From the IMG/VR virus record IMGVR_UViG_3300022839_000006, positions 62,001-126,000 of that record: DNA of 64,000 nt. One strand, written 5' to 3'. A model generated the notes under the pieces. The model did not search any database. It had not been told where the DNA came from and saw only the letters and a program-made list of their open reading frames with translations. Within the stretch, counting starts at the first letter, position 1, and every line of letters begins with the position of its first letter. Positions 11,361 through 57,000 of the stretch are shown one piece after another. A program made the position numbers and the translations under genes.

Positions 11361-11951
11361 ATGATTCTTGCAGGCATTGATTACAGTATGACATCACCAT
11401 CGATATGTGTTCACGATGGTGCAGAGTGGTCGATTGACAATTGCACCTTCCATTACATCGTTCAAAGAGACAAACACCTCGTGGTTACAAAACAGCTGCG
11501 CGGAAGTCTATATCCTGAATGGTCTTTGCTTGAGCAAAGATTTGACAACTTAGCAAAATGGTCACTTGGTGTTCTCCTTGAACACCAAGTTTCTTCCGTG
11601 ATGATAGAAGGTTATAGCTATGGAAGTAGCTCAAGTAGACTATTCCAAATCGCGGAGAACGGTGGAACACTAAAGCAAGCAATATGGAAAAGTAATATTC
11701 CATTTGCAGTCACACCGCCCACTGTAATTAAAAAATTAGCCACATCTAAAGGAAATTCCAACAAAGAAAAAATGTGGGATTCTTTCATCGAGGAGACCTC
11801 CCTCAATCTGTTCAATATTCTCGGCCAAGAAGAAAAAAAGAATTGGAATCCCGTATCAGACATGGTCGACGCGTACTATTTGGCAAAACACTGCTTCAAC
11901 GAACAGCACCCTCTACCCTTTATCTTAGAGCGTAACTCTATTATCGTCTAA
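11361..11951 (+). CDS. RuvC-like Holliday junction resolvase/endonuclease
   Basis: GIDYS, IEGYSYGS, PTVIKK..T.KGN..K, D..DAY. Confidence 0.85.
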   Translation: MILAGIDYSMTSPSICVHDGAEWSIDNCTFHYIVQRDKHLVVTKQLRGSLYPEWSLLEQRFDNLAKWSLGVLLEHQVSSVMIEGYSYGSSSSRLFQIAENGGTLKQAIWKSNIPFAVTPPTVIKKLATSKGNSNKEKMWDSFIEETSLNLFNILGQEEKKNWNPVSDMVDAYYLAKHCFNEQHPLPFILERNSIIV

Positions 11952-11967
11952 ATGCAAATTAAGTCAA
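11909..11967 (-). promoter_or_regulatory. antisense sigma70-like promoter element (TTGACT-16-GATAAT plus conserved downstream motif)
   Basis: -35 at 11967-11962, -10 at 11945-11940; downstream agagttacgctctaagataaagggtagaggg resembles the element at 35297. Confidence 0.55.
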
Positions 11968-34534: not shown

Positions 34535-35278
34535 TTAATTTATATCTGCTGTTAAACTGGCAGAGTCCGCTGTTAAACTGGTAGAATCTGCGGTAACTGC
34601 ATTGTTGTTTGCTGGTCTACGAATCACTTCGCTGAACGGATCTATTTCCGAGAAGTCTATAATATCATCTGCTTCTTCTTCGAAGAAGATATTCTTTGCA
34701 ATTGGGTCACTGTCATTGAGGCCAGTAAGTGTAGTGATAGTATCTGTTCTAATGCTATCAAAGAAACCGTCAATAGAAGGCGAGCCGGTTTCAAACCGCT
34801 CTCCAGAAAATTCAAACAGCTCACATTTCATATCAAAAACTTGTAATGCGCCAGTCTGGTAGAACACCGATTCGTGTTCAACAAATGCAATTTCAAAGAA
34901 CTTGCTATTAAGTGGCAAATATATAAGATCGCCTTCTTTAGGCCTCTCAATGAGAGGATTTGATCTTGTAATATATCGCTCAAAAGTTCTACGGGCAATT
35001 GTAAATGTTGCCTGATCTCGTATCTGCAAACCAAATTTACTTAGGAAGTCGCCTTCGCCTTGGAAGCCATCTACAGATTTAACATACATTTCAGCAGAAT
35101 ATGCAGCTGTGAAGATCGACAAGTCATCTTCGTTTAAAATCTGATCTACAGCTTGAAGAGACCTGGCAATATACACCATATCCAGTCCGTGAATCTGGAT
35201 GGATTCGATGACTAGATCATCGATGAGACTTTGCTCATTGAAGTTGTCATAGTTCCGAAAAAATACATTAGTCGCCAT
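34535..35278 (-). CDS. gp14: neck protein
   Basis: EQ.LI.DLV.ESI, GF.GEGD.LSKFGL, RPKEGDLIY.P. Confidence 0.95.
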   Translation of the reverse strand: MATNVFFRNYDNFNEQSLIDDLVIESIQIHGLDMVYIARSLQAVDQILNEDDLSIFTAAYSAEMYVKSVDGFQGEGDFLSKFGLQIRDQATFTIARRTFERYITRSNPLIERPKEGDLIYLPLNSKFFEIAFVEHESVFYQTGALQVFDMKCELFEFSGERFETGSPSIDGFFDSIRTDTITTLTGLNDSDPIAKNIFFEEEADDIIDFSEIDPFSEVIRRPANNNAVTADSTSLTADSASLTADIN

Positions 35279-35296
35279 ATCTTGTGCACTTTTTTG

Positions 35297-35360
35297 TTGA
35301 CATGTTTTCTATGTGTGGTATAATGGATTTATCCTCTATAGAATAAAGAGTAGGGGGGCG
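35297..35360 (+). promoter_or_regulatory. antisense sigma70 consensus promoter element
   Basis: TTGACA(35297)-16-TATAAT(35319) with extended TG, followed by ggatttatcctctatagaataaagagtagggggg; faces the gp13 3' end. Confidence 0.75.
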
Positions 35361-35368
35361 GATGAGGG

Positions 35369-36112
35369 TCATCCGATGAAGTTGAACACAAGTGGTTGCA
35401 GTGTATTAATTGCTTGTTCTTCAAGGCGAAGTCTCTCTTCACGTGCATCACTTAGGATTTGTGCTCCGTTGAATGTCACACCGCCGACAAGTTGCATATT
35501 TTCAAATTTTGTAAGGTTAAAGCCCCACTGTTCTTTTACAAGAGTGGTTGCATAATTCTGTAACCATCTGTCTCTCCAGAAGTCCGAATATAGCGTATCA
35601 TCTATAATGTCATATGCTTCCATGATAATAACCATTCCAGGGTAAAATTTCTTAGCATCAATATCAATAAAAAGTTTATCTACGTGTCTGTTATATCTGA
35701 TTAGAGGCGTGCCTACGAGCATTTCCTGAATAAACTCTAAATGTTGCATTGACATGACGTAATTTGTCAAGTTATATCCTGTGACGTCCGACAAATTATT
35801 CAACACGAACTGATACGACACATTAAACATGCCAGCCCCAGTAGATATTGAACTTGACAGATTAAAGATTCTTGTAACCCCAAGTAGTCTAGGAGATACA
35901 GAGATATAACCATTATCAATGTCTTCTTGTGTCATTGCATGCTTGAGATATATAAGTTGCGAGCCGTCGTAGTGGTAATCTCTAAAAAAACTAATTGCTT
36001 CATCAACACGATCGTCGACCTGCTCATCAGAGACGTTCACCTGAATAACAGGAGCACCGATTTTGCGAAGCAAATATTCTTTAAATTCTTCTCTGTTGCT
36101 TGGCTGAGCCAT
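35369..36112 (-). CDS. gp13: neck protein
   Basis: YLLRK.GAPVIQVNV.DEQ..DR.DEA, QWG.NL.KF..MQL.GGVT.NG; likely start MAQPS at 36112. Confidence 0.95.
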   Translation of the reverse strand: MAQPSNREEFKEYLLRKIGAPVIQVNVSDEQVDDRVDEAISFFRDYHYDGSQLIYLKHAMTQEDIDNGYISVSPRLLGVTRIFNLSSSISTGAGMFNVSYQFVLNNLSDVTGYNLTNYVMSMQHLEFIQEMLVGTPLIRYNRHVDKLFIDIDAKKFYPGMVIIMEAYDIIDDTLYSDFWRDRWLQNYATTLVKEQWGFNLTKFENMQLVGGVTFNGAQILSDAREERLRLEEQAINTLQPLVFNFIG

Positions 36113-36133
36113 TGTCCACACCCCTTTTTATTG

Positions 36134-36720: not shown

Positions 36721-37424
36721 AACCCGAAGTTAGCCTTTACTGAATCGTGAACTGCGATGTAATCTGGACCAATAAAATCTTCGTCGGTCAGACTATACTC
36801 GTGGAACTCAACGTTGTCTGGTTTCAGCTTTCCTAATGTAAAACCAAGTGGTTGTAGGAACTTATAACTATCAATCAACATCCATTTAGTCAACACACAT
36901 ATAAAACTATATTCAAACTGTATTACTTTTACTTTTCCTTCTTTGAGTGTATTTTCAAACCCTTTAAACACTTTACCTTCAGCACCTTCAGTGTCAATTT
37001 TTAGATAATCAATTTGCTGAATTTGTCTACTTTCAACATACTGATCGCCTGTCATTGTGAGGCCTGTTCTGATCTCGCTATCATCAAGTTGCAAGTCAAG
37101 AATTGAAGTGCTGAGTGCGTCATAAGAAGCTTTATATCTCATGGGGATTGAGCCAGCGGAATCAGACAAACCGAAACTGTTTGGGATCATCTTGTCGTCG
37201 AGTTCAATGTTGGAAAGCATTCTTCGGTATGTATCTGGTATTACCTCGAACATATGAATATCAGCGTCCGCTTGATATTGTCTTGTCATGTTAGTCCACT
37301 CGCCGATATTTGAACCAACGTCAAAAATGGTTTTAAACTGATTTTTAAATCTTTCTTGGATCCAAGTCTCGCCGTGCTCTTGAAATTCTCTCGTTGCGTA
37401 GGATCTATCGTATACGTGTGTCAT
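36717..37424 (-). CDS. FkbM-family SAM methyltransferase
   Basis: IFDVGSNIGEW, FE..P, IDYLKIDTEGAE..V..G, IQFEY. Confidence 0.92.
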   Translation of the reverse strand: MTHVYDRSYATREFQEHGETWIQERFKNQFKTIFDVGSNIGEWTNMTRQYQADADIHMFEVIPDTYRRMLSNIELDDKMIPNSFGLSDSAGSIPMRYKASYDALSTSILDLQLDDSEIRTGLTMTGDQYVESRQIQQIDYLKIDTEGAEGKVFKGFENTLKEGKVKVIQFEYSFICVLTKWMLIDSYKFLQPLGFTLGKLKPDNVEFHEYSLTDEDFIGPDYIAVHDSVKANFGL

Positions 37425-40141
37425 TATCTAAAAACCCTTGTATCATTATGTGTTACGGATACTGTATTTTCTTTTTCAACTGTTTGTGACTCGACTGGCT
37501 GCTCTGTCTTTTCGACCACAGCAATTTGCTCATTCAATTTGAAGGTGTGATTTCCTATGTGTTCGCACTTAATCGAAGTGTCTGCCCAAATCTTAAATCC
37601 TAGGTCTCTTGCTTTTTTGCAAAAGTAAACGTCCTCAGAAACGGTGTTGATATGTTCAAGAGCTGACGTGTAATAAAAATGTGGGTATTCCATTGTGCGT
37701 ATTACATTTGCTTTTACTAGACATGCACCGAAACCACATCCAGCAATTTCAACAACACCTCTGTCTTTGAGCATCTCGTAAGGAATGTTAGTCATACCGC
37801 CAGACGGCGTGTCCATATACAATTCAACTGTATGGGTATTTGTGATTCGTTGTATGTACAATCCAGAGATTACATCCACATCAGCAGACAACATTCTTAC
37901 GAGTGCATCTTCAGGTAGTACTATATCACTGTCTACCGAAAAGAGATAATCATATCTCTTTGTCCATTCAGCAATTAAATTTCGAATCTGGTCGATTTGA
38001 TATCCATAAGCATACTGAAAGTCTACTTTGTATCCTTCTGGGACGGTCATATTATATATTGACTTCATAGTTTCAGGCTCTATGTATCTATTAGTTGGTA
38101 TTGCTAATAGTATTGTTTTCACTGTTGCATCCTTTTTATCTTTTTCGTATGAAAGATTGGCATTTTTATTCTGCTCGTCTCCACTTACCTTATAATCATT
38201 GAGTGGGTTTGCATCGTTATAATTGCAGACTATTTCCTTATTACAATAGATCTTTTCTGGTTCTATTCTTTCTATCAGTTCATAGAAAAGAGGGTTGTCG
38301 TGCCCTGATTTCATCCACTCTCCATTCACTTTGAATTTTTCGACATCAAGAGTGGGAAAATATTCTCCCAAGCATGTCCTGAGATGCGTATACGGAATTT
38401 TCCAGTTGAAGTGATGATCTCTATAAGATCTCGTTTTCTTTACTTCAATGGGATAATCTTGAGCTATCAGAGGTATGTTATCTGCAACGGACCACATTGA
38501 CCCGTAAGTAAATTCATAGCCCTGACCATAAAGGTCGTTGTAGTAATGGAAGATTGTATTGTTATTTATAAGCCAATCGTCACCGTCTAACAACATCACA
38601 ATGTCGTCTGGTTTGCAACCACTCACCGCTTTGATCTGATTTGCGATGGCACCTTCATTTTCTTCATTTCTAATCAACTGAAATTTTGATTTTAGATTGT
38701 GTGAAAGAGAGTTGATTGTCTGTTGTGCTATTTCGAACGAGTTGTCGTCCGAGCAATCGTCAATTAAAATGTGTGTATAGTTGTCATAATCCTGCTGGGC
38801 AATTGAAAGAATATTCTTCTGAATGTACTTTTCAGCGTTCCAAAACGGAGATATTACTGAAATTCTTTTCTGGTTGTTGAACGATCTATACTCTTTTCTG
38901 ACTGGCATTTCGCTAGTTCTTCCGAACACGCGAGAAACCTTGTCGTTGATGCGAGTGACATTTTGATAGTCTTCAACGGAGAGAAACTCGTCATTGATCT
39001 TATATAAGAATTGCTTCCATTGAAGAGCAACTGTATCCCATCCGTAAACATCCTTGATGACATCGCAGTAATTTTGCTTCTGTTGATGAGCATATGGGTT
39101 ATTATAGGCATTAAAGAATGTAGCAAGAAACTTTTTAACCTGTTCTTCTTTGTTGATGTGAGGAAAAAGATTGTTAGGCTCAATTGCATAATCAATTTGA
39201 TAGCACGCAAGATCAATTGCTGTTTCTTCAAGTGCGCCAAATCGTGTTGTTACGATAGGAGTTCTATACAGTAGAGATTCAAGCGACGATATGCCGAATG
39301 TTTCTGGGAAAGCACCTGGGTACAGCATCATATATGCGTTTGCAAGTATTCCTGCAATTTCGTGCTGAGGGATTACCCCAGTAAATGTGACACCTAAATC
39401 TTTTAGATCTTGACTGTTTGTTAGTTCAGAAACTGTATTTTCCTGAGCATCAGGCTCGGCACCTTCTCTGAAACGGTAATACCCACCGATAATGGTCAAC
39501 CTTGCTTCTGGGATATGTTTCTTAATCTCTGGCCAAATATGTTGTACTAGAGGCAACATTCCCTTAGTTGCAGATGCATTGTAAACAAAATGGTTCTTGT
39601 CTTTTTTTGATATGTCAACTTCAGGAATGTGACAGACAGCGCCGTTGCGAGTTTGAAAGATTGACTTCTTGAGAACTTCATAATTTCTCTTTTTACCGTG
39701 TGCGCAAGTAAGAATATACGAGGTGTGCCAATCAGAAAGAGTAAATATGTGGTCAATTTTACCAGAAATTACAAGGTCTTCTACCAGCTGATCGCCTTCT
39801 ATAAAGGTATCATGAAGCCAGAGTAACCTCTTGTTAGCAGTATGTATGAATGGGTAGTCGTTATTTACAAATGGCTCGACAGTTCTCGAAACTATGACCG
39901 AATCGTAGGTTTCATTGTGCGACTTTGCATCTTTGTTGTCGATGTATCGAACGTTATCATACGTACCAGCTTGAGAACGGGAAGAGTCATCACAGTTGTT
40001 AAAAACCGTGACGTGAAACCCTAGTTCTGCTAGTTCTTTTGAAATCAGTGTTACAGCGGACTCTGAGCCCCCAAGACCTTGTTTTGATAGTGTAGTGCCA
40101 TCATAACATAAGCCGATCTTGTCAATAAGTGCTATTTTCAT
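37424..40141 (-). CDS. three-domain glycosyltransferase (GT4-like GT-B + GT2 + GT2-like GT-A)
   Basis: GLGGSE and YP..FPETFGISSLE (GT4); ISVI.P..N...IDDCS.D and LDGDD (GT2); VDSDI, GCGFG, SED.YFC, CEHIG (GT-A). Confidence 0.9.
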   Translation of the reverse strand: MKIALIDKIGLCYDGTTLSKQGLGGSESAVTLISKELAELGFHVTVFNNCDDSSRSQAGTYDNVRYIDNKDAKSHNETYDSVIVSRTVEPFVNNDYPFIHTANKRLLWLHDTFIEGDQLVEDLVISGKIDHIFTLSDWHTSYILTCAHGKKRNYEVLKKSIFQTRNGAVCHIPEVDISKKDKNHFVYNASATKGMLPLVQHIWPEIKKHIPEARLTIIGGYYRFREGAEPDAQENTVSELTNSQDLKDLGVTFTGVIPQHEIAGILANAYMMLYPGAFPETFGISSLESLLYRTPIVTTRFGALEETAIDLACYQIDYAIEPNNLFPHINKEEQVKKFLATFFNAYNNPYAHQQKQNYCDVIKDVYGWDTVALQWKQFLYKINDEFLSVEDYQNVTRINDKVSRVFGRTSEMPVRKEYRSFNNQKRISVISPFWNAEKYIQKNILSIAQQDYDNYTHILIDDCSDDNSFEIAQQTINSLSHNLKSKFQLIRNEENEGAIANQIKAVSGCKPDDIVMLLDGDDWLINNNTIFHYYNDLYGQGYEFTYGSMWSVADNIPLIAQDYPIEVKKTRSYRDHHFNWKIPYTHLRTCLGEYFPTLDVEKFKVNGEWMKSGHDNPLFYELIERIEPEKIYCNKEIVCNYNDANPLNDYKVSGDEQNKNANLSYEKDKKDATVKTILLAIPTNRYIEPETMKSIYNMTVPEGYKVDFQYAYGYQIDQIRNLIAEWTKRYDYLFSVDSDIVLPEDALVRMLSADVDVISGLYIQRITNTHTVELYMDTPSGGMTNIPYEMLKDRGVVEIAGCGFGACLVKANVIRTMEYPHFYYTSALEHINTVSEDVYFCKKARDLGFKIWADTSIKCEHIGNHTFKLNEQIAVVEKTEQPVESQTVEKENTVSVTHNDTRVFR

Positions 40142-40175: not shown

Positions 40176-41936
40176 TTATTTATCCTTGCTCAATTTCCTT
40201 ACCGCGTCAACCAATATTGCAATCAGAGGTATGTAAGAGACCGACTTGACACCATTTTCGTTTGTTGTTACTAAATCTGGCACAATCTGCTCTAGTTCTT
40301 GTGCAATAACACCGTAGCTTTTCTTCTTGTTGTCTTTCCAATTAAAGGAGTATGTGCCAATTTGATTAATAATACCAAGACTGTCTATATCAGAATTGAA
40401 ATTCTCTTTATAATTTGCATCAGATAGAGAGTTAAATTCAGTAGCATTTAATGTGCCAGTTGAAGGATTAAAATACAATTTATCTGAAGCAACGTATACT
40501 ACCTGCGCAACTCCGCTACTAGATCCAACGAAACCTAAAAATCTGGTTGCATCAGTAGTTTCGTTGGTTATAGTAATACTTGAACCTTCTGCAGCAGGAC
40601 CTTGACTTCCGGTAAATCCTAAGTCACCTTTGGATCCGGTAAATCCTGCCCCTTGTGAGCCGACATAGCCAGTGTCACCTTTGGATCCGGTAAATCCTAC
40701 GTCACCTTTGGATCCAGTAAACCCAGCTGTGCCTTGACTTCCAGTAAAACCAAAGTCTCCCTTGGAACCAACAAAGCCAGTATCACCTCGACTGCCAGTG
40801 TAACCAATTGAACCTGCATAGCCTAGGTCACCTTTGGATCCAACAAAACCAGTAAATCCTAGTGACCCGGTGTAACCAATTGAACCAGCATAACCCAAAT
40901 CGCCTTTGGACCCAGCATATCCTACGTCACCTTGCGATCCAGAATAACCCAAAACACCTTTACTGCCAGTAAATCCAAAAGATCCAGTGTATCCTACATC
41001 GCCTTTGGATCCAGAATAACCAGTTGTACCTTGACTTCCGACATAACCAATTGAACCAGCATAACCCAAATCACCTTTGGATCCATCAAAACCAGTTGTA
41101 CCTTGGCTACCGACATAACCAATCGAACCGACATAACCCAAATCGCCTTTGGATCCATCAAAACCAGTTGTACCTTGGCTACCAGTAAATCCTTGCGACC
41201 CAGTGTAACCAATCGAACCGACATAACCCAAATCGCCTTTGGATCCATCAAAACCAGTTGTACCTTGGCTACCAGTAAATCCTGCCCCTTGGGAACCAGC
41301 ATAACCCAAATCGCCTTTGGACCCATCAAAACCAGTTGTACCTTGGCTACCAGTAAATCCTAGCGACCCAGTGTAACCAATCGACCCAGTAAACCCTAGT
41401 TGGCCGCGCGACCCAGAAAAGCCTATCAAGCCCTGTGATCCTGCGAAACCTATACTGCCCTGTGATCCTGCGAAACCTATACTGCCCTGCGAACCCGCGT
41501 ATCCCCGAGAACCTATATCGCCTTTCGAACCTGTGAAGCCGAGAGGACCTGTGAAGCCAGTCTCGCCTTTTGAGCCTGTAAAGCCAACAGAGGCGGCCTC
41601 TCCTGCTACACCTTGAATGCCTTGGGACCCAGAAAAGCCTAACGAACCAGTGTAACCCAGTTCGCCTTGGGATCCTGCAAAGCCAAGTGATCCAGTAAAG
41701 CCGAGAGAACCTGTGAAGCCTATCTCGCCTTTTGAGCCTGTATAGCCAACAGCAGCATATGCGCCCGCTACACCTTGAGATCCAGTAAAACCTCTACTAC
41801 CAGAAAAGCCACTGTTGCCTTTAGATCCGTCAAAGCCGCTGGTGCCCTGTGAACCTGTGTACCCTCTATTTCCTACAGTATTTACTGCTATTCTAGGACC
41901 TACGGTGGTGCTAGGTATCACGATTAAATCGCTCAA
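40176..41936 (-). CDS. collagen-like fibre protein with C-terminal S74 intramolecular chaperone
   Basis: Long (G-F/Y-T/A/V/S/D-G-S-X)n run; SD..YKEN, YGVIAQELE..VP.LV, V.Y..L. Confidence 0.88.
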   Translation of the reverse strand: MSDLIVIPSTTVGPRIAVNTVGNRGYTGSQGTSGFDGSKGNSGFSGSRGFTGSQGVAGAYAAVGYTGSKGEIGFTGSLGFTGSLGFAGSQGELGYTGSLGFSGSQGIQGVAGEAASVGFTGSKGETGFTGPLGFTGSKGDIGSRGYAGSQGSIGFAGSQGSIGFAGSQGLIGFSGSRGQLGFTGSIGYTGSLGFTGSQGTTGFDGSKGDLGYAGSQGAGFTGSQGTTGFDGSKGDLGYVGSIGYTGSQGFTGSQGTTGFDGSKGDLGYVGSIGYVGSQGTTGFDGSKGDLGYAGSIGYVGSQGTTGYSGSKGDVGYTGSFGFTGSKGVLGYSGSQGDVGYAGSKGDLGYAGSIGYTGSLGFTGFVGSKGDLGYAGSIGYTGSRGDTGFVGSKGDFGFTGSQGTAGFTGSKGDVGFTGSKGDTGYVGSQGAGFTGSKGDLGFTGSQGPAAEGSSITITNETTDATRFLGFVGSSSGVAQVVYVASDKLYFNPSTGTLNATEFNSLSDANYKENFNSDIDSLGIINQIGTYSFNWKDNKKKSYGVIAQELEQIVPDLVTTNENGVKSVSYIPLIAILVDAVRKLSKDK

Positions 41937-42857: not shown

Positions 42858-44468
42858 TTATCCTTTTATAATGATTTTAGTGGTGGCTACAGCAACCCCT
42901 GCATAGACATTTGGGTTGCCTGGAGTTTGAGCTAAGGCGCCGGTACCGGTCACGAAGTATTGCTGCGCCGTTACCAAGCCTGACTGTGACTCATTTACCG
43001 AACCGCCAATTTGCACAGTAGCTGTGGCAGCATCAGCGTAGGCTCCAGCAGAAAAGCCAATGTAGTTCTCAGTGGTCAGATTTGTTCCTACAGCGTCTAG
43101 GCTATCAATTGAAATAGCAGTACCGAAGTTAGAGTTGCCGAAGTCTCTGTAAGCAATGGCAACTTTGTTTGAGTTGCTGTCAAAAGTTGCCAAGGGGGTG
43201 AAGGTACTTGCACTTTCAAACACGACAGGAGTGCCAAAGCTGATTGAAGTCCCACTGACAGTCCCTACAACGGCAGTGCCGAAGCCAGAGTTGGCTTCGT
43301 CTCTATAGGCAATGACGACCTTGTTGTTGAAACTGTCAAAAGTGATTGTGATGTTGGTGGTATCGGCACTTGCAAACACGACAGTAGTACCAAAGCTAAT
43401 TGAAGTTCCACTGACAGTACCTACTCTGGCAGTGCCGAAGCTGGAGCTGCCTCTATAGGCAATGACGACCTTGTTGTTGAAACTGTCAAAAGTGGCTGAG
43501 ATATGGTATGTGTATGCACTATTGAACACGACAGCAGTGCCAAAGCTGATTGAGGTTCCACTGACAGTACCTACTACAGCAGTGCCGAAGCCAGAGTTGC
43601 CGCTGTCTCTATAAGCAATGACGACTTTGTTTGAGTTGCTGTCAAAAGTGGCTGAGATAAGGGCGGTATTTGCACTTTCAAACACGACAGGAGTGCCGAA
43701 GCTAATTGAAGTTCCACTGACAGTACCTACTCTGGCAGTGCCGAAGCTGGAGTTGCCGGCGTCTGAATAAGCAATGACAACCTTATTGTTGGAACTGTCA
43801 AAGGTGGCTGAGATGTTGGTAGCATTTGCACTCTCGAACACGACATGAGTGCCGAAGCTGATTGAAGTCCCACTGACAGTTCCTACAACGGCAGTGCCGA
43901 ATTGAGAGTTGCCGTTGTCTCTATAAGCAATGACGACCTTGTTTGAGTTGCTGTCAAAGGTGGCCGCGGTATAGGTGGCACTTGCACTCTCGAACACGAC
44001 AGGAGTGCCGAAGCTGATTGAGGTTCCGCTGACAGTACCTACAACGGCAGTGCCGAAGCCGGAGTTGCCGTAGTCTGTATAAGCAACGACAACCTTATTG
44101 TTGAAACTGTCAAAAGTGGCTGACATCCAGTCGGTAGTTGCACTATTGAACACGACAGCTTCAGAAGAACTAAGACCAACCGCACTCACAGTACCATCTG
44201 CGTTAATAACTACAGGCACGCCATTTGGCAGTGTACCAGAGGCGATTGCTTGCAATGTCGGACCGGTCGATCCGCCAATTGATCCCCACTCAACCCCACC
44301 AAATCCTTCAAATGTAGCGGCTGTGCTGTTGTATCTTAGTTGTCCAATGACGCCCACAGGTCTTTCAAGATCAGTACCTACTGGAACCTTAATTGCAGTG
44401 GTTCCTGCTAAATCTATGTATGCAGTCTGATCGTTTATGATCGTGGTGCCTTGTATTTTGATTGCCAT
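42858..44468 (-). CDS. putative receptor-binding protein A, 7 x 52-aa repeat beta-propeller
   Basis: N-terminal P.GT..ERP....GQLRYN....FEG fibre motif; seven SATFDS.NNKVVIAY..GNS.FGTAVVGTVSGTSISFGT repeats. Confidence 0.8.
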   Translation of the reverse strand: MAIKIQGTTIINDQTAYIDLAGTTAIKVPVGTDLERPVGVIGQLRYNSTAATFEGFGGVEWGSIGGSTGPTLQAIASGTLPNGVPVVINADGTVSAVGLSSSEAVVFNSATTDWMSATFDSFNNKVVVAYTDYGNSGFGTAVVGTVSGTSISFGTPVVFESASATYTAATFDSNSNKVVIAYRDNGNSQFGTAVVGTVSGTSISFGTHVVFESANATNISATFDSSNNKVVIAYSDAGNSSFGTARVGTVSGTSISFGTPVVFESANTALISATFDSNSNKVVIAYRDSGNSGFGTAVVGTVSGTSISFGTAVVFNSAYTYHISATFDSFNNKVVIAYRGSSSFGTARVGTVSGTSISFGTTVVFASADTTNITITFDSFNNKVVIAYRDEANSGFGTAVVGTVSGTSISFGTPVVFESASTFTPLATFDSNSNKVAIAYRDFGNSNFGTAISIDSLDAVGTNLTTENYIGFSAGAYADAATATVQIGGSVNESQSGLVTAQQYFVTGTGALAQTPGNPNVYAGVAVATTKIIIKG

Positions 44469-44559
44469 CTTCGCTTCCCCTTGTGGATACTCGGCTATTA
44501 TTTGTAATTTTCACTATAATCATTATATGTATTGTATTTTCGTACTTCAGTGTTACTTG

Positions 44560-44567
44560 TATTTATA
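44560..44567 (-). promoter_or_regulatory. T4-type late promoter TATAAATA
   Basis: Exact consensus upstream of propeller A. Confidence 0.75.
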
Positions 44568-44620
44568 AAGGATAGACATTTAATTGTGTGAGCAAAGTAC
44601 ACTTAAAATAGCATCACTGT

Positions 44621-44712
44621 CAGTGATTTTGTCACTTTCAATTAGTAGTGTCTTAGTGTCTTAGTGTCTTCAAAAGGTAGAGGGATAAATTATCTTTAGT
44701 AAGTGTTTTTAT
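44621..44712 (-). pseudogene. decayed copy of the 5' part of the 85-aa gene (42594-42851)
   Basis: Aligns by eye with ~42768-42851 (aggtagaggga, attttgtca); ATG changed to ATA; tcttagtg slippage repeat. Confidence 0.75.
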
Positions 44713-44717
44713 TTGGT

Positions 44718-46337
44718 TTATCTTTTCACTATGAGTTTTGTAGAGGATACAGCAACACCCGCATAGACTTCAGGGTTGCTCGGAGTTTCAGCTAAGGTGC
44801 CATTACCGGTCACGAAGTATTGCTGTCCGGCTGTCAAGCCTAATTGAACACCGTTGATCGCACCGATAAGCTGCACAGTAGCTGTGGTAGCATCAGCGTA
44901 GGCTCCAGCAGAAAAGCCAATATAGTTCTCAGTGGTCAGATTTGTTCCTGCAGCGCTTAGACTATCAATTGAAATAGCAGTGCCGAAGCCGGAGTTGCCG
45001 TCGTCTCTATAAGCAATGACAACCTTGTTTGAGTTACTGTCAAAGGTGGCTGAGATAAAGTAGGTAGTTGCACTTTCAAACACGACAGGAGTGCCGAAGC
45101 TGATTGAAGTCCCACTGACAGTCCCTACAACGGCAGTGCCGAAGCTGGAATTGCCCACGTCTCTATAAGCAATGACGACTTTGTTGTTGAAACTGTCAAA
45201 AGTGGCTGAGATCCGGTCGGTACCTGCACTCGCGAACACGACAGGAGTGCCGAAGCTGATTGAAGTCCCACTGACAGTTCCTACAATGGCAGTGCCGAAG
45301 TAAGAATTGCCGTTGTCTGAATAAGCAATGACGACCTTGTTTGAGTTGCTGTCAAAAGTGGCCGAGATGTAGTTGGCAGTTGCACTCTCGAACACGACAG
45401 TAGTGCCGAAGCTGATTGAAGTCCCACTGACAGTTCCTACGACAGCAGTGCCGAAGCCAGAGTTGCCGTCGTCTCTATAAGCAATGACAACCTTGTTTGA
45501 GTTACTGTCAAAGGTGGCTGAGATAAAGTAGGTACTTGCACTCTCGAACACGACAGCAGTGCCGAAGCTGATTGAAGTCCCATTGACAGTTCCTACGACA
45601 GCAGTGCCGAATCGAGAGTTGTTGCCTTCGTCTCTATAAGCAATGACAACCTTATTGTTGAAACTGTCAAAGGTGGCCGAGATGTGGCTGGTAGTTGCAC
45701 TCTCGAACACGACAGTAGTGCCGAAGCTGATTGAAGTCCCACTGACAGTTCCTACGACAGCAGTGCCGAATCGAGAGTTGCCCACGTCTGTATAAGCAAT
45801 GACAACCTTATTGTTGAAACTGTCAAAAGTGGATAAGATGTAGTTGGTAGGTACACTCGCGAACACGACAGGAGTGCCGAAGCTGATTGAAGTCCCACTG
45901 ACAGTTCCTACGACAGCAGTGCCGAAGCCGGAGTTGTATGAGTCATAATAAGCAACGACAACCTTATTGTTGAAACTGTCAAAGGTGTCCGAGATCCAGC
46001 TGGTACCTGCACTCTCGAACACGACAGCTTCAGAAGAACTAAGACCAACCGCACTCACAGTACCATCTGCGTTAATAACTACAGGCACTCCATTTGGCAG
46101 TGTACCAGATGCAATTGCTTCTAATGTTGGGTTGGCCGATCCGCCAATTGATCCCCAGCCAGCCCCACCAAATCCTTCAAATGCAGCCGCGGTGCTGTTG
46201 TATCGTATCTGTCCAGTGACACCCGCAGGTCTTTCAAGATCAGCACCTACCGGAACCTTAATTGCAGTGGTTCCTGCTAAATCTATGTATGCAGTCTGAT
46301 CGTTTATGATCGTGGTGCCTTGTATTTTGATTGCCAT
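44718..46337 (-). CDS. putative receptor-binding protein B, 7 x 52-aa repeat beta-propeller (paralog of A)
   Basis: Same N-terminus MAIKIQGTTIINDQTAYIDLAGTTAIKVPVG and same repeat framework. Confidence 0.8.
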   Translation of the reverse strand: MAIKIQGTTIINDQTAYIDLAGTTAIKVPVGADLERPAGVTGQIRYNSTAAAFEGFGGAGWGSIGGSANPTLEAIASGTLPNGVPVVINADGTVSAVGLSSSEAVVFESAGTSWISDTFDSFNNKVVVAYYDSYNSGFGTAVVGTVSGTSISFGTPVVFASVPTNYILSTFDSFNNKVVIAYTDVGNSRFGTAVVGTVSGTSISFGTTVVFESATTSHISATFDSFNNKVVIAYRDEGNNSRFGTAVVGTVNGTSISFGTAVVFESASTYFISATFDSNSNKVVIAYRDDGNSGFGTAVVGTVSGTSISFGTTVVFESATANYISATFDSNSNKVVIAYSDNGNSYFGTAIVGTVSGTSISFGTPVVFASAGTDRISATFDSFNNKVVIAYRDVGNSSFGTAVVGTVSGTSISFGTPVVFESATTYFISATFDSNSNKVVIAYRDDGNSGFGTAISIDSLSAAGTNLTTENYIGFSAGAYADATTATVQLIGAINGVQLGLTAGQQYFVTGNGTLAETPSNPEVYAGVAVSSTKLIVKR

Positions 46338-47999: not shown

Positions 48000-48012
48000 T
48001 TACTTTACCTTG

Positions 48013-52413: not shown

Positions 52414-55337
52414 AGTGTTGTCCTACTGTTAGCGGCTCTTCTAGCCAATCTTCTTACTGATGATGTGAAGGGGCGACCTTCAAGTCGCCCGGTTCTTCCG
52501 TTAATTTTCAAACCTCTCGCAAAATACTGGTTATTAAGTTCGTCAGCACCTGACCAACGGACTCTACCAAGATCTTCTTGGAGAACAGAACCGCTTGCTG
52601 CAAGCGGAGTTCCCACTCTTCTGAAGTTCAACGGAAGAGCGTTCGTGTTAACACCAGCGCCAGCAAGGTTGAACTGATGACCAATAGATTCAATTAGACT
52701 TCCGAATTGTAATTTTTTAGGTTTCAATAGTGTTGTTTTAAGTAATATAAACAACTCGTCCAGCATAACGAGTTCTGGCGTTGTCAATGTCACGTTATTT
52801 ACTATATATTCTTCTATTTTTCCATATGCAAATACAAACGAATCTAAGACTGATGTGTTGTTCGGACCGTCATTTATCCATGCAGAACCGCTCCAGTAAT
52901 ATATATTTCCTTCATAGTAATTATTAACTGTCACTGCAACAATATATGCATCATTTACATTAGGCAGAAGAACACTTTCGTCAAGAGAAGCAATGCTGAA
53001 AAGACTTTTAATATATGTCAAGCCATCTGTTACTGGGTTGAATACTCTGAAAACATGATCTCCCTTATAATCGAAAAATCCAGCTGCATAGTTTCGAATT
53101 GGTGATTGATTGCCAGATTGGAAGTCATACACAAGAGAAGTTATAAGATTCCCGGTATCCCTTCTAGTAAAGATTTCATCAATGAAGTTATATTCAAGAT
53201 TGATATAAACTGCTGTGTCAATTTTAATTTTCTCTGCGTCAGCCTCGATCAGTTCTTTACTTTCGATGAAGTTGGATGCAACCCAATCGAAATCTGGTTC
53301 AAATCCAAGTGCAAGTGCGCCAAGAGTATTTTGTTTAATTACAGTTGATATAATACCTGTTAGCCGTGCACATAGCAGAGCTTCTACGTCCGATGCAACA
53401 TTGCCTGATATTACCTGAGTAGGTAATGTGCCAACAACCGCAAGTGCACATTGGCTGCCTAGGTATTCGATAGCTGCGGCAGTGGATGCTCTCTGATCAG
53501 CGGGCAATTGACTCGAAGATCCAAGAAAATAAGCTTGTGCATTGACTATAGAAGCAAGGTTGCCACCGTAGTTTAAATCGTGTGAAAGCGCATCAATGAT
53601 GTACCCAGTATCTCTAACACACGTGGCTGTGTTATACGATATAGAAGGATGATTCGTACCAATCCAACTTATTACGCTATCTATAATCAGAGATCTGTTT
53701 GCTAGCAATTGAGTTCTTGCACTTACTTGATTTGGCACACCAGAATCTGCGAAAGTGAGGACATTTGCATTTGCACTTCCGTTTACTAATATGTCAAGCG
53801 TTTCATCAAAAGAAGCGTTTGATCTTGTTATGCTTGGAGCATCAGTTAGAAGTGCAGCAACTGCATTCCTAGCATATACAATTCCACCAACAGTTTCCTC
53901 TAACTGATCAGTAATTACAAGGGCGGACATTGCTCTTCTGTATGATATACCATTTACTATTGACCAATAGTTCGTATCAAGAGTAATATCTCTTCCCACA
54001 CCATCTAGTATATAACCAATGTCTCTTTTGCACTTAGTTGAATCATAACCTTGGTAGCCTAGATCAGAAACAAGCGCGTCCCATACATAATCAGTGATGT
54101 CGTCTTTAATTGCCGTTATGTCAGCAGCGGCCTGTTCGCCTACGACCATAAGGTCTGTGTCTGACACCTCGAAAGGATCTACTACAAACGTCGAACCTTT
54201 CGAGCGCATTGATATGTCGCCGAATTGAGTGCCTGAGTTGTTTAATGTAACCTGGCCGCCATTGAGTGCGAAGAATGCACATCTCTGGAATATTGTGATA
54301 GAACCAATTCCGTTAATACCAGCGCCATTCTTAGCAACATATCCTAGCCCGTTTGGCGAGCGAGGAGTAGCACCAAAAGCAAGCATGTATGGGAATATTG
54401 AATTTTGATTTAATACTGATCTGTCTGCAAGAAGCATGCCGCCGCCACGGCCGACCAATGAGTTAGGATGGTCAGTACCGCCAAGATCACTAATTCCGCC
54501 TAGACTGTTTGTTGGATTTAAAGGGGCAGCAATTGTTTTGCGTCTATAGTTTGAAATTTGACTACTATCTCTTATATAAGGAGATCGAAGAATAAGAGCA
54601 CCAGGTCTATATGCTACTGCAAATCCCTTAGTAGGGTTATCAAAACTGTCAACTTGCTGGCCTATAAATGCAAACCCTTGCACATAGCATCCAGATCCAA
54701 CTAGGAAGACATTGTTTACTTCATAACCTTCTTGCATAATGATATTTGTTGCGTACTGGCCGTTTGTGGAGACGACAGAGCAGTCGTCTGGTAACGCCAA
54801 ATTGCCTTTTGTGTAGTAACTACCTGGAAGTACAGATATTGCTACAGGAGTCAAGCTACGCTGTGCTGCAGCAAAGCCATCTTCAAGTGTGTTGTAGGGC
54901 TTCATGTAACTTCCGTTGGCGGAAGTTGCGGAATATCCATCAGCTGAAATGTACACTTTTGTAGTTTTCTTGAATTCGTCAGCAATGCTAGCTGTCAAGT
55001 CAGCCCAAGAAAAAGATACAATGGTATCGGCTGACTGGTCTTTTAGCAGGAAATGATCATCTTCAGCAACAGTATCGGTTAGGACAGGAAGATTTGAAAA
55101 TGTCGGGTTTAAAATATCAATAACATCGAATGACGAGTTTCTTATGGTAACATTAGATATGTCACCGCCTGTAATATTAATATCAGAAAAATCTTCTTGC
55201 TGTATAGCGTTTACAAGTTCTTTTCGTGTAATGTTCTTAGTACCAAGATCACCAGCTTCTACATCAACTGTAACAAACAAATCGTTGGTTTTTGTTTGAA
55301 TACCGGCCTTTGGTAATAACTCAGAGATTTTTGACAT
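52410..55337 (-). CDS. large virion structural protein (beta-helix-like region plus helical C.RD.GY repeats)
   Basis: KISEL start, PY.T...A..PG.Y, RSPYI, KCKRDIGY and TCVRDTGY repeats. Confidence 0.75.
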   Translation of the reverse strand: MSKISELLPKAGIQTKTNDLFVTVDVEAGDLGTKNITRKELVNAIQQEDFSDINITGGDISNVTIRNSSFDVIDILNPTFSNLPVLTDTVAEDDHFLLKDQSADTIVSFSWADLTASIADEFKKTTKVYISADGYSATSANGSYMKPYNTLEDGFAAAQRSLTPVAISVLPGSYYTKGNLALPDDCSVVSTNGQYATNIIMQEGYEVNNVFLVGSGCYVQGFAFIGQQVDSFDNPTKGFAVAYRPGALILRSPYIRDSSQISNYRRKTIAAPLNPTNSLGGISDLGGTDHPNSLVGRGGGMLLADRSVLNQNSIFPYMLAFGATPRSPNGLGYVAKNGAGINGIGSITIFQRCAFFALNGGQVTLNNSGTQFGDISMRSKGSTFVVDPFEVSDTDLMVVGEQAAADITAIKDDITDYVWDALVSDLGYQGYDSTKCKRDIGYILDGVGRDITLDTNYWSIVNGISYRRAMSALVITDQLEETVGGIVYARNAVAALLTDAPSITRSNASFDETLDILVNGSANANVLTFADSGVPNQVSARTQLLANRSLIIDSVISWIGTNHPSISYNTATCVRDTGYIIDALSHDLNYGGNLASIVNAQAYFLGSSSQLPADQRASTAAAIEYLGSQCALAVVGTLPTQVISGNVASDVEALLCARLTGIISTVIKQNTLGALALGFEPDFDWVASNFIESKELIEADAEKIKIDTAVYINLEYNFIDEIFTRRDTGNLITSLVYDFQSGNQSPIRNYAAGFFDYKGDHVFRVFNPVTDGLTYIKSLFSIASLDESVLLPNVNDAYIVAVTVNNYYEGNIYYWSGSAWINDGPNNTSVLDSFVFAYGKIEEYIVNNVTLTTPELVMLDELFILLKTTLLKPKKLQFGSLIESIGHQFNLAGAGVNTNALPLNFRRVGTPLAASGSVLQEDLGRVRWSGADELNNQYFARGLKINGRTGRLEGRPFTSSVRRLARRAANSRTTL

Positions 55338-55477
55338 AGTCTGCCTTTTCCATGTGGTGTTATTTGATTCTATTTATACTTTTTGAGTTGACAGAAATGT
55401 GTTGACCTAGTCTGCCTTATCCATGCGGTGTCATTTGATTCTATTTATACGTTTGAGTTGACAGAAATGTGTTGACA
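55331..55477. repeat. ~70-bp tandem duplication, each copy with a late promoter (TATAAATA at 55371-55378 and 55442-55449, - strand)
   Basis: ttgac.tagtctgcctt.tccatg.ggtgt.atttgattctatttatac...tttgagttgacagaaatgtg occurs twice. Confidence 0.92.
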
Positions 55478-55530
55478 TGCTTCAAAGTGAGTGGTATAAT
55501 GGATTTATCCCCTATAATATGATAGAGTGT
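55472..55530 (+). promoter_or_regulatory. antisense sigma70 consensus promoter element
   Basis: TTGACA(55472)-17-TATAAT(55495), then ggatttatcc.ctata as at 35297. Confidence 0.78.
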
Positions 55531-55563: not shown

Positions 55564-57000
55564 TTAAGGGAATGTAGGATCGACAGGTGCAGTTGGTGAC
55601 AACTGTGTCTTTGTTCCACTTCCGTTAAGTGGAACTGTAAGAGTAGCATTTTTTGAGAAAGTATAAGAGTTGCCATTAAACGATATTTCCGCGTAGCCCT
55701 GCCTTGCAGGCGCACCCGAATATCTAAAGTCGTGACCTTGTCCACCAGCGCCCAGTTTAATTTTTATTGTGTCGCCTATGTTGACATTAATCGTGCCCGA
55801 CACGATTTTACCTGCCTCGCCGCCACGTCCTCCATTGCCACTGGAATCAAAAGTACTAGGGCTGTCACCACCACCACCGCCGCCCCCAGATCCCCAAGCG
55901 CCAGCTCCAGGTGAACTGCCCCTTTGTTTTAAGCCACCGCGTCTACCGCCCGTGTTTGGAAACCAACCAGATTTTCCATCCATTTGGGTAAGATCATTAT
56001 AGCTATTCGCAAATGATCGACCAGCTGTTCCTCCCGCGGCAGTTTTCTTTACTGTGTTGTTAATCGCAAAGGTAGAACTTCCGCCAGGAGCAGGATATAT
56101 GCCAGCGCCAGCGCCACCGTCATCTTCTCTGCCAGCACCTCCACCACCACCGCCTCCTATAATTTTATAGGTTACAGTATAAAAAGTAGGCAGTGCTGGT
56201 CGTACTGCAATAAATACATTTGCTGATCTACTAACTGATTGAGTTACGTTGCCTGCATATGTGGCGGTAACAGTAGTATTTGTTGCAAGCAATTGGTAAT
56301 TAGTGGTTGATGTAGCACCACTTCCTGAATATGTTGGAGATACAGATCTCGTGCCAGTTGAAGATACGGTCCCAATTCCTACTAATTCAACTTTGGTCGC
56401 ACCTGTAACACTCCACGATAGAGTAGCACTGTCACCTGAATATATAGTGGCAGGGCTTCTAGAAAATGTGATGCTGGGTGCAACAGGAGGTGTGATAGAT
56501 TCATCAAGTATCACAACAGTAGATGATGTTGATACTATAGTACCAGATACCGAGCCAGTTCTTAGTTGAATATTAAATGACTGAGTGCCCTCTGTTAACA
56601 GATCCTTTTTAAGTGTCCTTGTAAATTGTGCAGCGTTGTTAACAATAGTAATAGAACCCGTTAGAGCAGAATCAGTAAAATCTGCTGCTGTTGCAGAACC
56701 AGATGTTGACCAATACAATTTGGTGCCGTCTACTATAGCGGTAGTTCTGACTTGGAAAGTTGCAGTGGAACCTTCTGGGATTGAACCTGCCGAAGTCACA
56801 ACACTAAACGATTCGTTTACTGAACCATAAAAATTAGAGAAAAGAATTCTGCCAGATGTTGGTATATTAATATTTTCTGTGCCACTAGGAACACGGACAC
56901 CGCTGCGATAGTATTCACTTACATCATGAGGTGCAGTTCCGCCAAACTCTGCTACTACGTCCGCGCTTAAACCCAGAGCTCCAGCCGATTTAATTACCAT
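55564..57000 (-). CDS. glycine-rich fibre tip/adhesin-like structural protein
   Basis: G.L.LS.DV.AEFGG..PH..SEYYR N-terminus, Ig-like domains, GGGGG-rich C-domain. Confidence 0.75.
   Translation of the reverse strand: MVIKSAGALGLSADVVAEFGGTAPHDVSEYYRSGVRVPSGTENINIPTSGRILFSNFYGSVNESFSVVTSAGSIPEGSTATFQVRTTAIVDGTKLYWSTSGSATAADFTDSALTGSITIVNNAAQFTRTLKKDLLTEGTQSFNIQLRTGSVSGTIVSTSSTVVILDESITPPVAPSITFSRSPATIYSGDSATLSWSVTGATKVELVGIGTVSSTGTRSVSPTYSGSGATSTTNYQLLATNTTVTATYAGNVTQSVSRSANVFIAVRPALPTFYTVTYKIIGGGGGGGAGREDDGGAGAGIYPAPGGSSTFAINNTVKKTAAGGTAGRSFANSYNDLTQMDGKSGWFPNTGGRRGGLKQRGSSPGAGAWGSGGGGGGGDSPSTFDSSGNGGRGGEAGKIVSGTINVNIGDTIKIKLGAGGQGHDFRYSGAPARQGYAEISFNGNSYTFSKNATLTVPLNGSGTKTQLSPTAPVDPTFP

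What the first reader, a model, noticed from the sequence alone, without database searches (positions are those of the whole stretch)
35297..35375. Family of antisense sigma70 promoter elements firing into gene 3' ends (35297+, 55472+, 11967-)
Seen: two perfect TTGACA/TATAAT promoters lie in the late region on the non-coding strand and share gtggTATAATggatttatcc.ctata. A third (TTGACT-16-GATAAT, minus strand at the ruvC-like gene end) shares the downstream motif: agagttacgctctaagataaagggtagaggg versus ggatttatcctctatagaataaagagtagggggg. None has a credible downstream gene, and each transcript would start with a tiny hairpin and, in two cases, a purine/G-rich tract. Established: T4 replication origins are primed by promoter-driven R-loops. 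Inference: these are dispersed R-loop origins, or antisense RNAs that dampen premature late-gene expression.
Basis: partly seen in the sequence, partly recalled or inferred. Interest (0 to 1): 0.62.

Follow-up and report, generated by a model that had tools for sequence, protein, structure and literature searches.

The report
Backward-facing gene-less consensus promoters in phage
A salt-lake T4-like phage and its relatives, including the cultured Sinorhizobium phage phiM12, carry a few textbook-perfect host-type promoters with no gene behind them, pointing backwards between phage genes; they are real and conserved, but whether they make regulatory antisense RNA or prime DNA replication could not be tested here.

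Summary
In the whole 208-kb phage genome, only window 35297(+) and 55472(+) match TTGACA/TATAAT perfectly. Both have a TG extended -10, lie in gaps of the minus-strand late cluster, and share an exact 20-mer (25 of 26 bases). The third site, 11967(-), shares a 14-mer that occurs nowhere else.

A profile search adds two members outside the window. Relatives carry the same design, often at the same neck-gene junction (T4 gp13-like | gp14-like). So do the cultured phages phiM12 and phiN3.

No conserved ORF, Rfam family or conserved RNA fold lies downstream.

One new hallmark separates this class from ordinary sense early promoters: a 4-6 bp inverted repeat, of varying sequence, that starts at the first base after the -10 and spans the predicted start site (14/21 against 1/13).

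Function is inferred only, because no RNA data exist. My best guess (0.38) is strong early promoters that make untranslated antisense transcripts acting in cis. The main rival (0.30) is R-loop replication origins like T4 oriE and oriG, whose primer RNAs are also antisense to late genes.

I rate it a new variant of known kinds, of moderate interest.

The parts
35297..35324 (+). Site 1 promoter: TTGACA, 16-nt spacer, TGn, TATAAT. It sits in the 90-nt gap between the gp13-like and gp14-like neck genes.
35325..35334 (+). Inverted repeat GGAT-tt-ATCC that abuts the -10. The predicted +1 is A35331, inside it.
35332..35375 (+). Predicted transcript start: stem 35332-35339 / 35350-35357 with an A-rich loop, then hairpin 35359-35375, which contains the stop codon of the gp13-like gene on the other strand. 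The fold is weakly supported and specific to this genome.
35369..36121 (-). Head-tail adaptor Ad2 (T4 gp13-like). The site-1 transcript would run antisense into its 3' end. Its own late promoter TATAAATA is at 36141-36134.
34535..35278 (-). Head closure Hc2 (T4 gp14-like, Pfam T4_neck-protein). Its start codon lies 18 nt from the -35 of site 1. No late promoter of its own was found, so late transcripts must read through site 1.
55472..55500 (+). Site 2 promoter: TTGACA, 17-nt spacer, TGn, TATAAT.
55501..55518 (+). Inverted repeat GGAT-tt-ATCC (55501-55510) followed by a second perfect TATAAT at 55513-55518, about +7 to +12 of the predicted transcript.
55331..55478 (-). 71-bp tandem duplication (2.1 copies, 91%). 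On the minus strand it holds two late promoters (TATAAATA at 55449-55442 and 55378-55371), the leader, and the ATGTCAA start of the 975-aa fibre gene. The -35 of site 2 is the reverse complement of the distal ATGTCAA.
55564..57000 (-). 478-aa virion or fibre-cluster protein. The site-2 transcript would enter its 3' end after 57 nt.
11940..11967 (-). Site 3 promoter: TTGACT, 16-nt spacer, GATAAT. The -10 and everything downstream lie inside the last codons of the RuvC-like gene.
11910..11939 (-). Inverted repeat AGAG-ttacg-CTCT (11939-11927), then the shared ATAAAGGGTAGAGG motif (11923-11910). The motif forms the loop and 3' arm of a predicted CUCUA/UAGAG stem.
11361..11951 (+). RuvC-like Holliday junction resolvase, the gene that site 3 fires into.

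Best explanation
SHOWN: these are genuine, selectively maintained promoters for the host's primary-sigma RNA polymerase. They carry a perfect -35, a 16-17 nt spacer, often TGn, a perfect -10, G two bases after the -10, and T/A at -1/+1. They sit in short gaps between co-oriented phage genes and point backwards. There is no ORF behind them. INFERRED: right after infection they load host polymerase very efficiently and launch an untranslated transcript that runs antisense into the 3' end of the upstream gene. Their job is then cis-acting and tied to the early phase: polymerase parked at, and firing from, the site opposes read-through into the downstream gene, and the RNA can pair with the intercistronic part of the sense message. 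The block lifts when host-type promoters are shut off, so late polymerase can cross. At site 1 it must cross to express the gp14-like gene. The start-site-spanning inverted repeat is a defining but unexplained part of the design.
For: - Uniqueness: these are the only two 12/12 sites in 208 kb, and both are gene-less and antisense. Ordinary early promoters in the genome are 10-11/12 and are followed by a leader, an AAAGGA-type ribosome site and ATG.
- Conservation: 8 distinct relatives (62-78% aa identity in the gp14-like protein) carry an antisense promoter at the same gp13|gp14 junction. Seven have perfect TTGACA-16-TATAAT and L010 has TTGACT-16-GATAAT. Spacer and downstream sequence differ between them. 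Most relatives have no gap at that junction.
- Near relative: L083 keeps both hexamers and the repeat arms of site 3, while the spacer, the loop and the upstream sequence have changed.
- Excess over control: 36 pattern hits in 10 relatives' records against 5 in reversed-pattern controls. Many are antisense and intergenic.
- Cultured phages: phiM12 and phiN3 each have three such antisense intergenic copies.
- Class-specific features against sense promoters: inverted repeat 14/21 vs 1/13 (p=0.001); a -10-like TA box near +7, 18/25 vs 3/18; G at the second base after the -10, 16/25 vs 3/18.
- No ORF, no Rfam family.
- The late promoter map shows site 1 lies inside a late operon.
- Precedent for early antisense RNAs over structural genes: PMC4933390.
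Against: - No expression data exist for this phage.
- The transcripts would cover the 3' end of the upstream gene, not a ribosome site. Only 2-5 sites exist per genome, so they cannot silence a whole late region unless the RNAs run for many kb.
- The upstream and downstream genes share no function: neck, fibre, resolvase, helicase fragment, lysis-region gene.
- Site 3 is not at an early/late boundary.
- A structured RNA 5' end is not a general feature of the class, which argues against a classical kissing-loop antisense RNA.
- In phiM12 one copy precedes a small ORF that is conserved in phiN3, so some members may simply be promoters of tiny genes.
Confidence: 0.38

Rival explanations
1. They are R-loop replication origins of the T4 oriE/oriG type. 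The strong promoter makes an untranslated RNA that stays hybridised to the template and primes leading-strand synthesis. The inverted repeat in the displaced strand might help hold the loop open or attract the helicase loader.
For: - The T4 record says the oriE primer RNA is the complement of the late gene 5 transcript, and the oriG primer RNA runs opposite to late fibre gene 34.
- The minimal T4 origins are about 100 bp: a promoter plus a downstream unwinding element. Early T4 DNA synthesis starts in late-gene regions (PMC3016281).
- The numbers are comparable: 5 sites in 208 kb here, and roughly 2-5 antisense sites in the complete relatives.
- Being gene-less and the strongest promoters in the genome fits a priming role.
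- The phage has a gp59 helicase-loader homologue, and no MotA or AsiA was detected. Origin promoters would therefore have to be plain sigma70-type.
- Site 2 lies in the fibre cluster, as oriG does.
Against: - There is no distinct A+T-rich unwinding element. The 30 nt after the -10 are 33% GC, against 35% for sense promoter leaders, and the next 70 nt are 38% in both.
- In compact copies the transcript enters conserved coding sequence about 20-25 nt after the -10.
- The G/purine tract is not general to the class.
- The 5' stem-loops predicted for this genome's copies would compete with hybrid formation.
- Forks primed here would move head-on into local genes, including early ones at site 3.
- No replication data exist.
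Confidence: 0.3
2. They are mobile or recombining promoter cassettes related to PeSLs: units that spread or are homogenised by recombination. In this genome they are orphan copies that have lost, or never had, a small ORF, and the promoter has little function of its own.
For: - Copies at unrelated loci share identical cores: 26 nt for sites 1 and 2; 16-20 nt for site 3 and the two extra copies.
- In relative G005, three copies share about 130-200 nt, and two of them lie 140 kb apart on opposite strands.
- L010 carries a site-3-type copy at the gp13|gp14 junction, where this phage has a site-1-type copy.
- The junction element is present or absent among relatives.
- phiM12 copies share the promoter, the leader and an ATGAGCGAAGCGAA start, followed by divergent small ORFs, which is PeSL-like.
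- The -35 regions of sites 1 and 2 are copies of gene starts (ATGTCAA...).
- PeSLs are described in PMC2839356 and PMC4122927.
Against: - Perfect hexamers and fixed spacing are kept across relatives at 62-78% aa identity while the surrounding bases diverge. That indicates selection on promoter activity, not decay.
- There is no terminator stem-loop upstream of the -35 and no ribosome site plus ORF downstream.
- Orientation is consistently against the neighbours, which neutral insertion would not produce.
Confidence: 0.17
3. They are promoters for very small proteins or for a trans-acting small RNA, for example one aimed at a host factor or a defence system.
For: Tiny ORFs follow some copies: 5, 5, 17 and 10-11 aa here (read) and 4 aa with a good ribosome site in G005 (read). 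phiM12 gp042 and its phiN3 counterpart share a C-terminal IGDNV.P.YRRF.
Against: No ORF is conserved among copies or between relatives at the same junction. There is no Rfam hit. The phiM12 and phiN3 transcripts have no consensus RNA structure. No clear terminator defines a short RNA.
Confidence: 0.1
4. They are chance matches to the promoter consensus in A+T-rich intergenic DNA.
For: Weak promoter-like matches (9-10 of 12) are no more frequent than in shuffled sequence.
Against: Perfect matches: 2 observed against 0.02 expected. They also share extra sequence, are conserved in relatives, and show class-specific features.
Confidence: 0.01

Closest known systems
T4 replication origins oriE and oriG (promoter-driven primer RNA antisense to late genes 5 and 34)
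   Same: A promoter without a conventional gene product, set in a late structural region and transcribing against the late genes. A few per genome. Positions are not fixed among relatives. Site 2 is in the fibre cluster, as oriG is.
   Different: oriF and oriG use MotA-dependent middle promoters plus an A+T-rich unwinding element, and oriE has 12-nt iterons and the repEA/repEB genes. Here the promoters are plain consensus sigma70 sites in intergenic gaps. No distinct unwinding element or iterons were found, and there is a start-site inverted repeat. T4 itself has no match to the pattern.
PeSLs (promoter-early stem-loop regulatory cassettes of T4-type phages; Arbiol 2010, Comeau 2014)
   Same: Near-perfect sigma70 promoters repeated around a T4-type genome. 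Copies share sequence and seem to exchange. They are associated with insertions and deletions. The phiM12 copies share promoter, leader and start codon ahead of divergent small ORFs.
   Different: PeSLs have a terminator stem-loop upstream of the -35 and a ribosome site plus ORF downstream. They lie in hyperplastic early regions in the same orientation as their genes. These elements point against their neighbours, lack an ORF in this genome, and carry the inverted repeat downstream of the -10.
Early cis-antisense RNAs over structural genes (phage PAK_P3; T4 'anti-late' RNA, the latter from my own knowledge)
   Same: Antisense orientation in structural regions, presumably made by host polymerase early, and proposed to hold back late-gene expression.
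   Different: In PAK_P3, 19 of 20 antisense RNAs start inside genes and were found by RNA-seq. Here the evidence is sequence only. The starts are intergenic, the promoters are the best in the genome, and three of five copies are not in the structural region.
Sigma70-dependent promoter-proximal pause elements (lambdoid PR' and lacUV5; from my own knowledge)
   Same: A strong promoter followed by a second -10-like hexamer in the first dozen transcribed bases. It is perfect TATAAT at 55513-55518 and TAGAAT at site 1. TA at that position is seen in 18/25 class members.
   Different: No Q-type antiterminator or terminated leader RNA is evident. The box may simply be the mirror half of a larger imperfect palindrome around the start site. 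Pausing was not tested.

Membership tests
Bacterial sigma70 (primary sigma) promoter | -35 TTGACA and -10 TATAAT separated by 16-18 nt | tested here: met
   Sites 1 and 2 are 12/12 and site 3 is 10/12.
Bacterial sigma70 (primary sigma) promoter | Accessory optimum elements: TGn extended -10, G two bases after the -10, pyrimidine/purine at -1/+1 | tested here: met
   TG is present at sites 1 and 2. Across the class, G is at the second base in 16/25 and T/A at -1/+1 in 23/25.
Bacterial sigma70 (primary sigma) promoter | Hexamers conserved in relatives while the spacer and flanks diverge | tested here: met
Bacterial sigma70 (primary sigma) promoter | A mapped transcription start | not testable with these tools
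   No RNA run holds this phage.
PeSL regulatory cassette | Strong sigma70-like early promoter present in several copies | tested here: met
PeSL regulatory cassette | Terminator stem-loop just upstream of the -35 | tested here: not met
   Upstream of sites 1 and 2 lie the neighbour gene's ribosome site and start codon, or a late promoter. Site 3 has only a 6-bp hairpin about 45 nt upstream with no U tract on that strand.
PeSL regulatory cassette | Shine-Dalgarno site and start codon of a downstream ORF, in the same orientation as neighbouring genes | tested here: not met
   No conserved ORF, and antisense orientation.
T4-type R-loop origin (oriF/oriG) | A promoter whose transcript has no other needed product and runs against late genes | tested here: met
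T4-type R-loop origin (oriF/oriG) | [quoted passage not shown] | tested here: inconclusive
   Downstream GC content does not differ from that of sense promoters.
T4-type R-loop origin (oriF/oriG) | Persistent RNA-DNA hybrid, and origin activity on plasmids or in the genome | not testable with these tools
   Needs DRIP, 2D gels, marker-frequency analysis or a plasmid replication assay.
Early cis-antisense RNA of lytic phages | A transcript antisense to annotated genes, more abundant early than late | not testable with these tools
   Orientation is met. Timing and abundance are unknown.
Any Rfam RNA family | A covariance-model match | tested here: not met
   No hit in the window at gathering score. 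There was no meaningful hit in the phiM12 and G005 copies: the only match at E up to 1 was a eukaryotic snoRNA model at E=0.67, far below its gathering score.

The most novel reading that the evidence does not exclude
These sites define an undescribed class of promoter-only genome elements in a broad clade of environmental and rhizobial T4-like phages. The design is a fully optimised host promoter, an inverted repeat that spans the start site, and a second -10-like box. The element works at the DNA or initiation level, as a time-gated polymerase roadblock or an R-loop origin lock, rather than through a gene product.
Probability: 0.3. Interest if true: 0.7.

Novelty: new variant of a known kind. 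Interest (0 to 1): 0.55.

Why it matters
How T4-like phages outside the T-even group time their late genes and start replication is largely unknown, especially for the many that lack MotA and AsiA. A small set of conserved, gene-less, maximal-strength host promoters that face backwards is a concrete and testable candidate for either role. The same design occurs in the cultured phage phiM12 on Sinorhizobium meliloti, so it can be tested at the bench. The start-site inverted repeat is a sequence rule that separates these sites from ordinary early promoters. It could be used to annotate them in metagenomic phage genomes.

Tried and rejected
- Megablast of the site-1 region against GenBank phages found nothing. 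The nearest cultured relatives are only about 48% identical at the protein level.
- Rfam found nothing in the window, and only a meaningless snoRNA match (E=0.67) in the phiM12 and G005 copies.
- A search for RNA sequencing runs found none, only salt-lake DNA metagenomes.
- The purine/G-rich tract as a class feature was rejected: 0.58 against 0.62 in sense promoters, p=0.27.
- An A+T-rich unwinding element as a class feature was not supported.
- A structured RNA 5' end as a class feature was rejected: mean z -0.41 against -0.87 for sense promoters. Only site 1 stands out, at z -2.2.
- No consensus RNA structure was found for the phiM12/phiN3 transcripts.
- A conserved small ORF downstream was rejected for the window's sites. 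The 80-aa ORF 35313-35555 starts upstream of the predicted +1. It is an open antisense frame of the gp13-like gene that also exists in relatives without the promoter.
- Synteny of site 2 with T4 oriE, on the idea that the 478-aa protein is gp5-like, was rejected: Pfam shows fibre-type neighbours and no lysozyme or hub domain.
- Site 3 as an early/late boundary was rejected: the downstream genes are exonucleases, PhoH and the like.
- The annotated 'promoter' next to the neck gene in Pseudomonas phage pf16 is a sense-strand prediction and unrelated.
- A single palindrome-binding protein per genome is unlikely, because copies within one genome carry different arms.
- A wide IMG/VR pattern scan mostly returned unrelated sense promoter families from other phages.
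- A literature search for T4 'anti-late' RNA found nothing in the held library, and one search timed out.

Full report
CONTEXT. The window is bases 62,001-126,000 of a single 208,230-bp contig with 42% GC. It is a T4-like myovirus. The window holds a head-tail adaptor Ad2 (T4 gp13-like, 35369-36121, minus strand), a head closure protein Hc2 (T4 gp14-like, 34535-35278, minus strand), a gp9/10-like protein, fibre proteins and a RuvC-like resolvase. The gp13/gp14 naming follows the phiM12 annotation. The nearest cultured phages, Stenotrophomonas DLP6 and Sinorhizobium phiM12/phiN3, are only about 48% identical in the gp14-like protein. The DNA comes from salt-lake metagenomes. Genes run on the plus strand up to about window 21,400 and on the minus strand from there on. 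T4-type late promoters (TATAAATA followed by a leader, a ribosome site and ATG) are easy to recognise, for example at 36141, 55449, 55378 and 58092 on the minus strand. No AsiA or MotA domain was detected. A gp59 helicase-loader homologue is present.

Site 1 is TTGACA (35297-35302), a 16-nt spacer and TATAAT (35319-35324), with TG at 35316-35317. Site 2 is TTGACA (55472-55477), a 17-nt spacer and TATAAT (55495-55500), also with TG. They are the only perfect matches in the window, against 0.02 expected from shuffles. They are also the only perfect matches on either strand of the whole genome. The two share an exact 20-mer across the -10, and 25 of 26 bases overall. Site 3 is TTGACT-16-GATAAT at 11967-11940 on the minus strand. 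It shares with site 1 a 14-mer that occurs nowhere else in the genome, against 0.00 expected. All three point against the flanking genes. Contigs from four separate studies carry the site-1 region unchanged. A strain with 27 differences in 4 kb has only one in the 90-nt gap, and it lies outside the promoter.

THE FAMILY IS LARGER. A profile built from ten copies finds the three sites (E 7e-13 to 1e-9) and two more outside the window.
- Genome 168651(+) is TTGACC-16-GATAAT. It lies in an 83-nt gap just after the C-terminal fragment of a helicase gene that is split by a homing endonuclease.
- Genome 19324(-) is TTGTCA-17-GATAAT. It lies inside a plus-strand ORF next to the endolysin gene.
Both are again antisense. 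The genome therefore has two sub-types. Sites 1 and 2 share the -10 plus GGATTTATCC. Site 3 and the two extra copies share GATAAT plus AGAGTTAYGCTCT.

RELATIVES.
- Of 80 IMG/VR loci with a gp14-like gene, most have the gp13-like stop and the gp14-like start abutting. Eight distinct relatives (62-78% identity) carry an antisense promoter in an 80-190 nt gap at exactly this junction. Seven have perfect TTGACA-16-TATAAT and L010 has TTGACT-16-GATAAT. Spacers and downstream sequence differ, and no ORF follows.
- L010 has a site-3-type copy at that junction.
- The conserved 'cacttttctc' upstream of the -35 is the reverse complement of the ribosome site of the gp14-like gene.
- Site 3 is kept in a 97%-identical relative. 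Both hexamers and the repeat arms are unchanged, while the spacer, loop and flank have changed. In relatives at 60-69% identity it is replaced by a sense promoter.
- Scanning ten relatives' full records for TTGACW-N16/17-KATAAT gave 36 hits against 5 for a reversed control. Many lie in gaps between co-oriented genes and point backwards. Some are back-to-back with a late promoter, as at site 2.
- Three copies in one relative share about 130-200 nt, and two of them are 140 kb apart on opposite strands.
- phiM12 and phiN3 each carry three antisense intergenic copies: between gp55 and the uvsW operon, after a beta-glucanase gene, and before nrdJ.
- T4 and DLP6 have none.

WHAT DISTINGUISHES THE CLASS. 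A 4-6 bp inverted repeat with a 2-7 nt loop starts at the first base after the -10. At least 13 different arm sequences occur, including GGAT, AGAG, CAGT, AGCA, TGGAT, TGAAT, CAGAAT, TAGAT, AGGTA, AGCAT and CAGGA.
- The repeat is present in 14 of 21 antisense consensus promoters and 1 of 13 sense ones (Fisher p=0.001). The rate in shuffled sequence is 4.6%.
- Close pairs differ in the loop but keep the arms.
- The seventh or eighth base after the -10 is an A preceded by T in 23/25 copies. The likely start therefore lies in the loop, and only the 3' arm would be transcribed. The repeat is thus a DNA-level or initiation-level feature, or it acts in the sense transcript. I cannot explain it.
- Also enriched are G at the second base after the -10 (16/25 vs 3/18) and a TA-initiated -10-like hexamer about 12 bases after the -10 (18/25 vs 3/18). 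At site 2 that hexamer is a perfect TATAAT at 55513-55518.

WHAT IS NOT GENERAL. The purine/G-rich tract and a low-GC downstream stretch do not separate the class from sense promoters. In this genome, the motif shared by sites 1 and 3 forms the loop and 3' arm of a predicted 5' stem-loop. Across the class, however, 5' folding is no better than in shuffles or in sense leaders. The phiM12/phiN3 transcripts have no consensus fold. They share an ATGAGCGAAGCGAA start about 76 nt downstream, followed by divergent small ORFs. One of these ORFs is annotated and conserved between the two phages. Some class members may therefore drive tiny genes. The window's copies do not.

LOCAL DETAILS. Site 1 lies inside a late operon. 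The only late promoter upstream of the gp14-like gene is the one at 36141, ahead of the gp13-like gene. Late polymerase must therefore pass site 1 head-on. At site 2, the -35 is the reverse complement of ATGTCAA at the distal end of a 71-bp tandem duplication. That duplication repeats the late promoter, the leader and the start of the 975-aa fibre gene. The -35 flank of site 1 is a 15-nt reverse-complement copy of the start of gene 12520-12732.

INTERPRETATION. It is shown that these are real, conserved, optimised host-type promoters that are gene-less in this genome and antisense. Function is inferred.
- I favour (0.38) early untranslated antisense transcription acting in cis, as a block or antisense RNA that exists only while host-type promoters are active. 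This fits the position right before the next gene or late promoter, the need for late read-through at site 1, and the documented early antisense RNAs of PAK_P3.
- The R-loop origin reading (0.30) has strong T4 precedent: oriE and oriG use primer RNAs antisense to late genes 5 and 34, and a promoter plus an unwinding element suffices. No unwinding element or other origin-specific signal was found here.
- A PeSL-like recombining cassette (0.17) explains the shared cores and the patchy distribution. It does not explain the preserved perfect hexamers, and the defining PeSL parts are missing.

Noticed in passing
window 55331-55478: A 71-bp tandem duplication (2.1 copies, 91% identical) gives the 975-aa fibre gene two TATAAATA late promoters and a decoy start in which ATG has become AGG. 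The junctions are at the short repeat ATGTCAA.
   Followed up: partly
window 35289-35303 and 12520-12534: The 15 bases that include the -35 of site 1 are the exact reverse complement of the first 15 bases of the plus-strand gene 12520-12732 (ATGTCAACAAAAAAG). Several late genes here begin ATGTCAA, which supplies a ready-made antisense -35.
   Followed up: partly
window 35268-35303 (minus strand): An 11-codon upstream ORF starts at that ATGTCAA and stops 8 nt after the start codon of the gp14-like gene. It may give translational coupling in place of the stop/start overlap seen in relatives without the insert. This was read directly from the sequence, not from a tool result.
   Followed up: no
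genome 168,727-171,595 (locus L088 5727-8595), outside the window: A DNA helicase gene is split into a 450-aa N-terminal part and a 92-aa C-terminal part by a 384-aa homing endonuclease gene. One extra family member sits directly after the C-terminal fragment.
   Followed up: partly
window 19694-21154: A 486-aa HNH homing endonuclease gene lies at the point where the plus-strand and minus-strand gene blocks converge.
   Followed up: no
window 40176-41936, 42858-46337, 46374-51980: There is a run of large minus-strand genes full of tandem repeats. Two are paralogues of about 540 aa with 156-nt units. Several others have 9/18/27-nt periodic repeats, which look like collagen-like or fibre repeats.
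   Followed up: no
window 37424-40141: A 905-aa protein with several glycosyltransferase-type matches lies just upstream of the neck genes. Relatives also have glycosyltransferase-like genes at this position.
   Followed up: no
Sinorhizobium phage phiM12 NC_027204.1 around 22169(+), 84385(-), 156286(-), and the same places in phiN3: These cultured phages carry the same antisense consensus promoters with CAGG(A)...(T)CCTG repeats at the start site and a shared ATGAGCGAAGCGAA block. No description of them was found in the papers held.
   Followed up: partly
window 34544-34537 (minus strand): TATAAATT, one mismatch from the late-promoter consensus, lies 11 nt ahead of the start of the 418-aa gp9/10-like gene. 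It is a likely variant late promoter.
   Followed up: no
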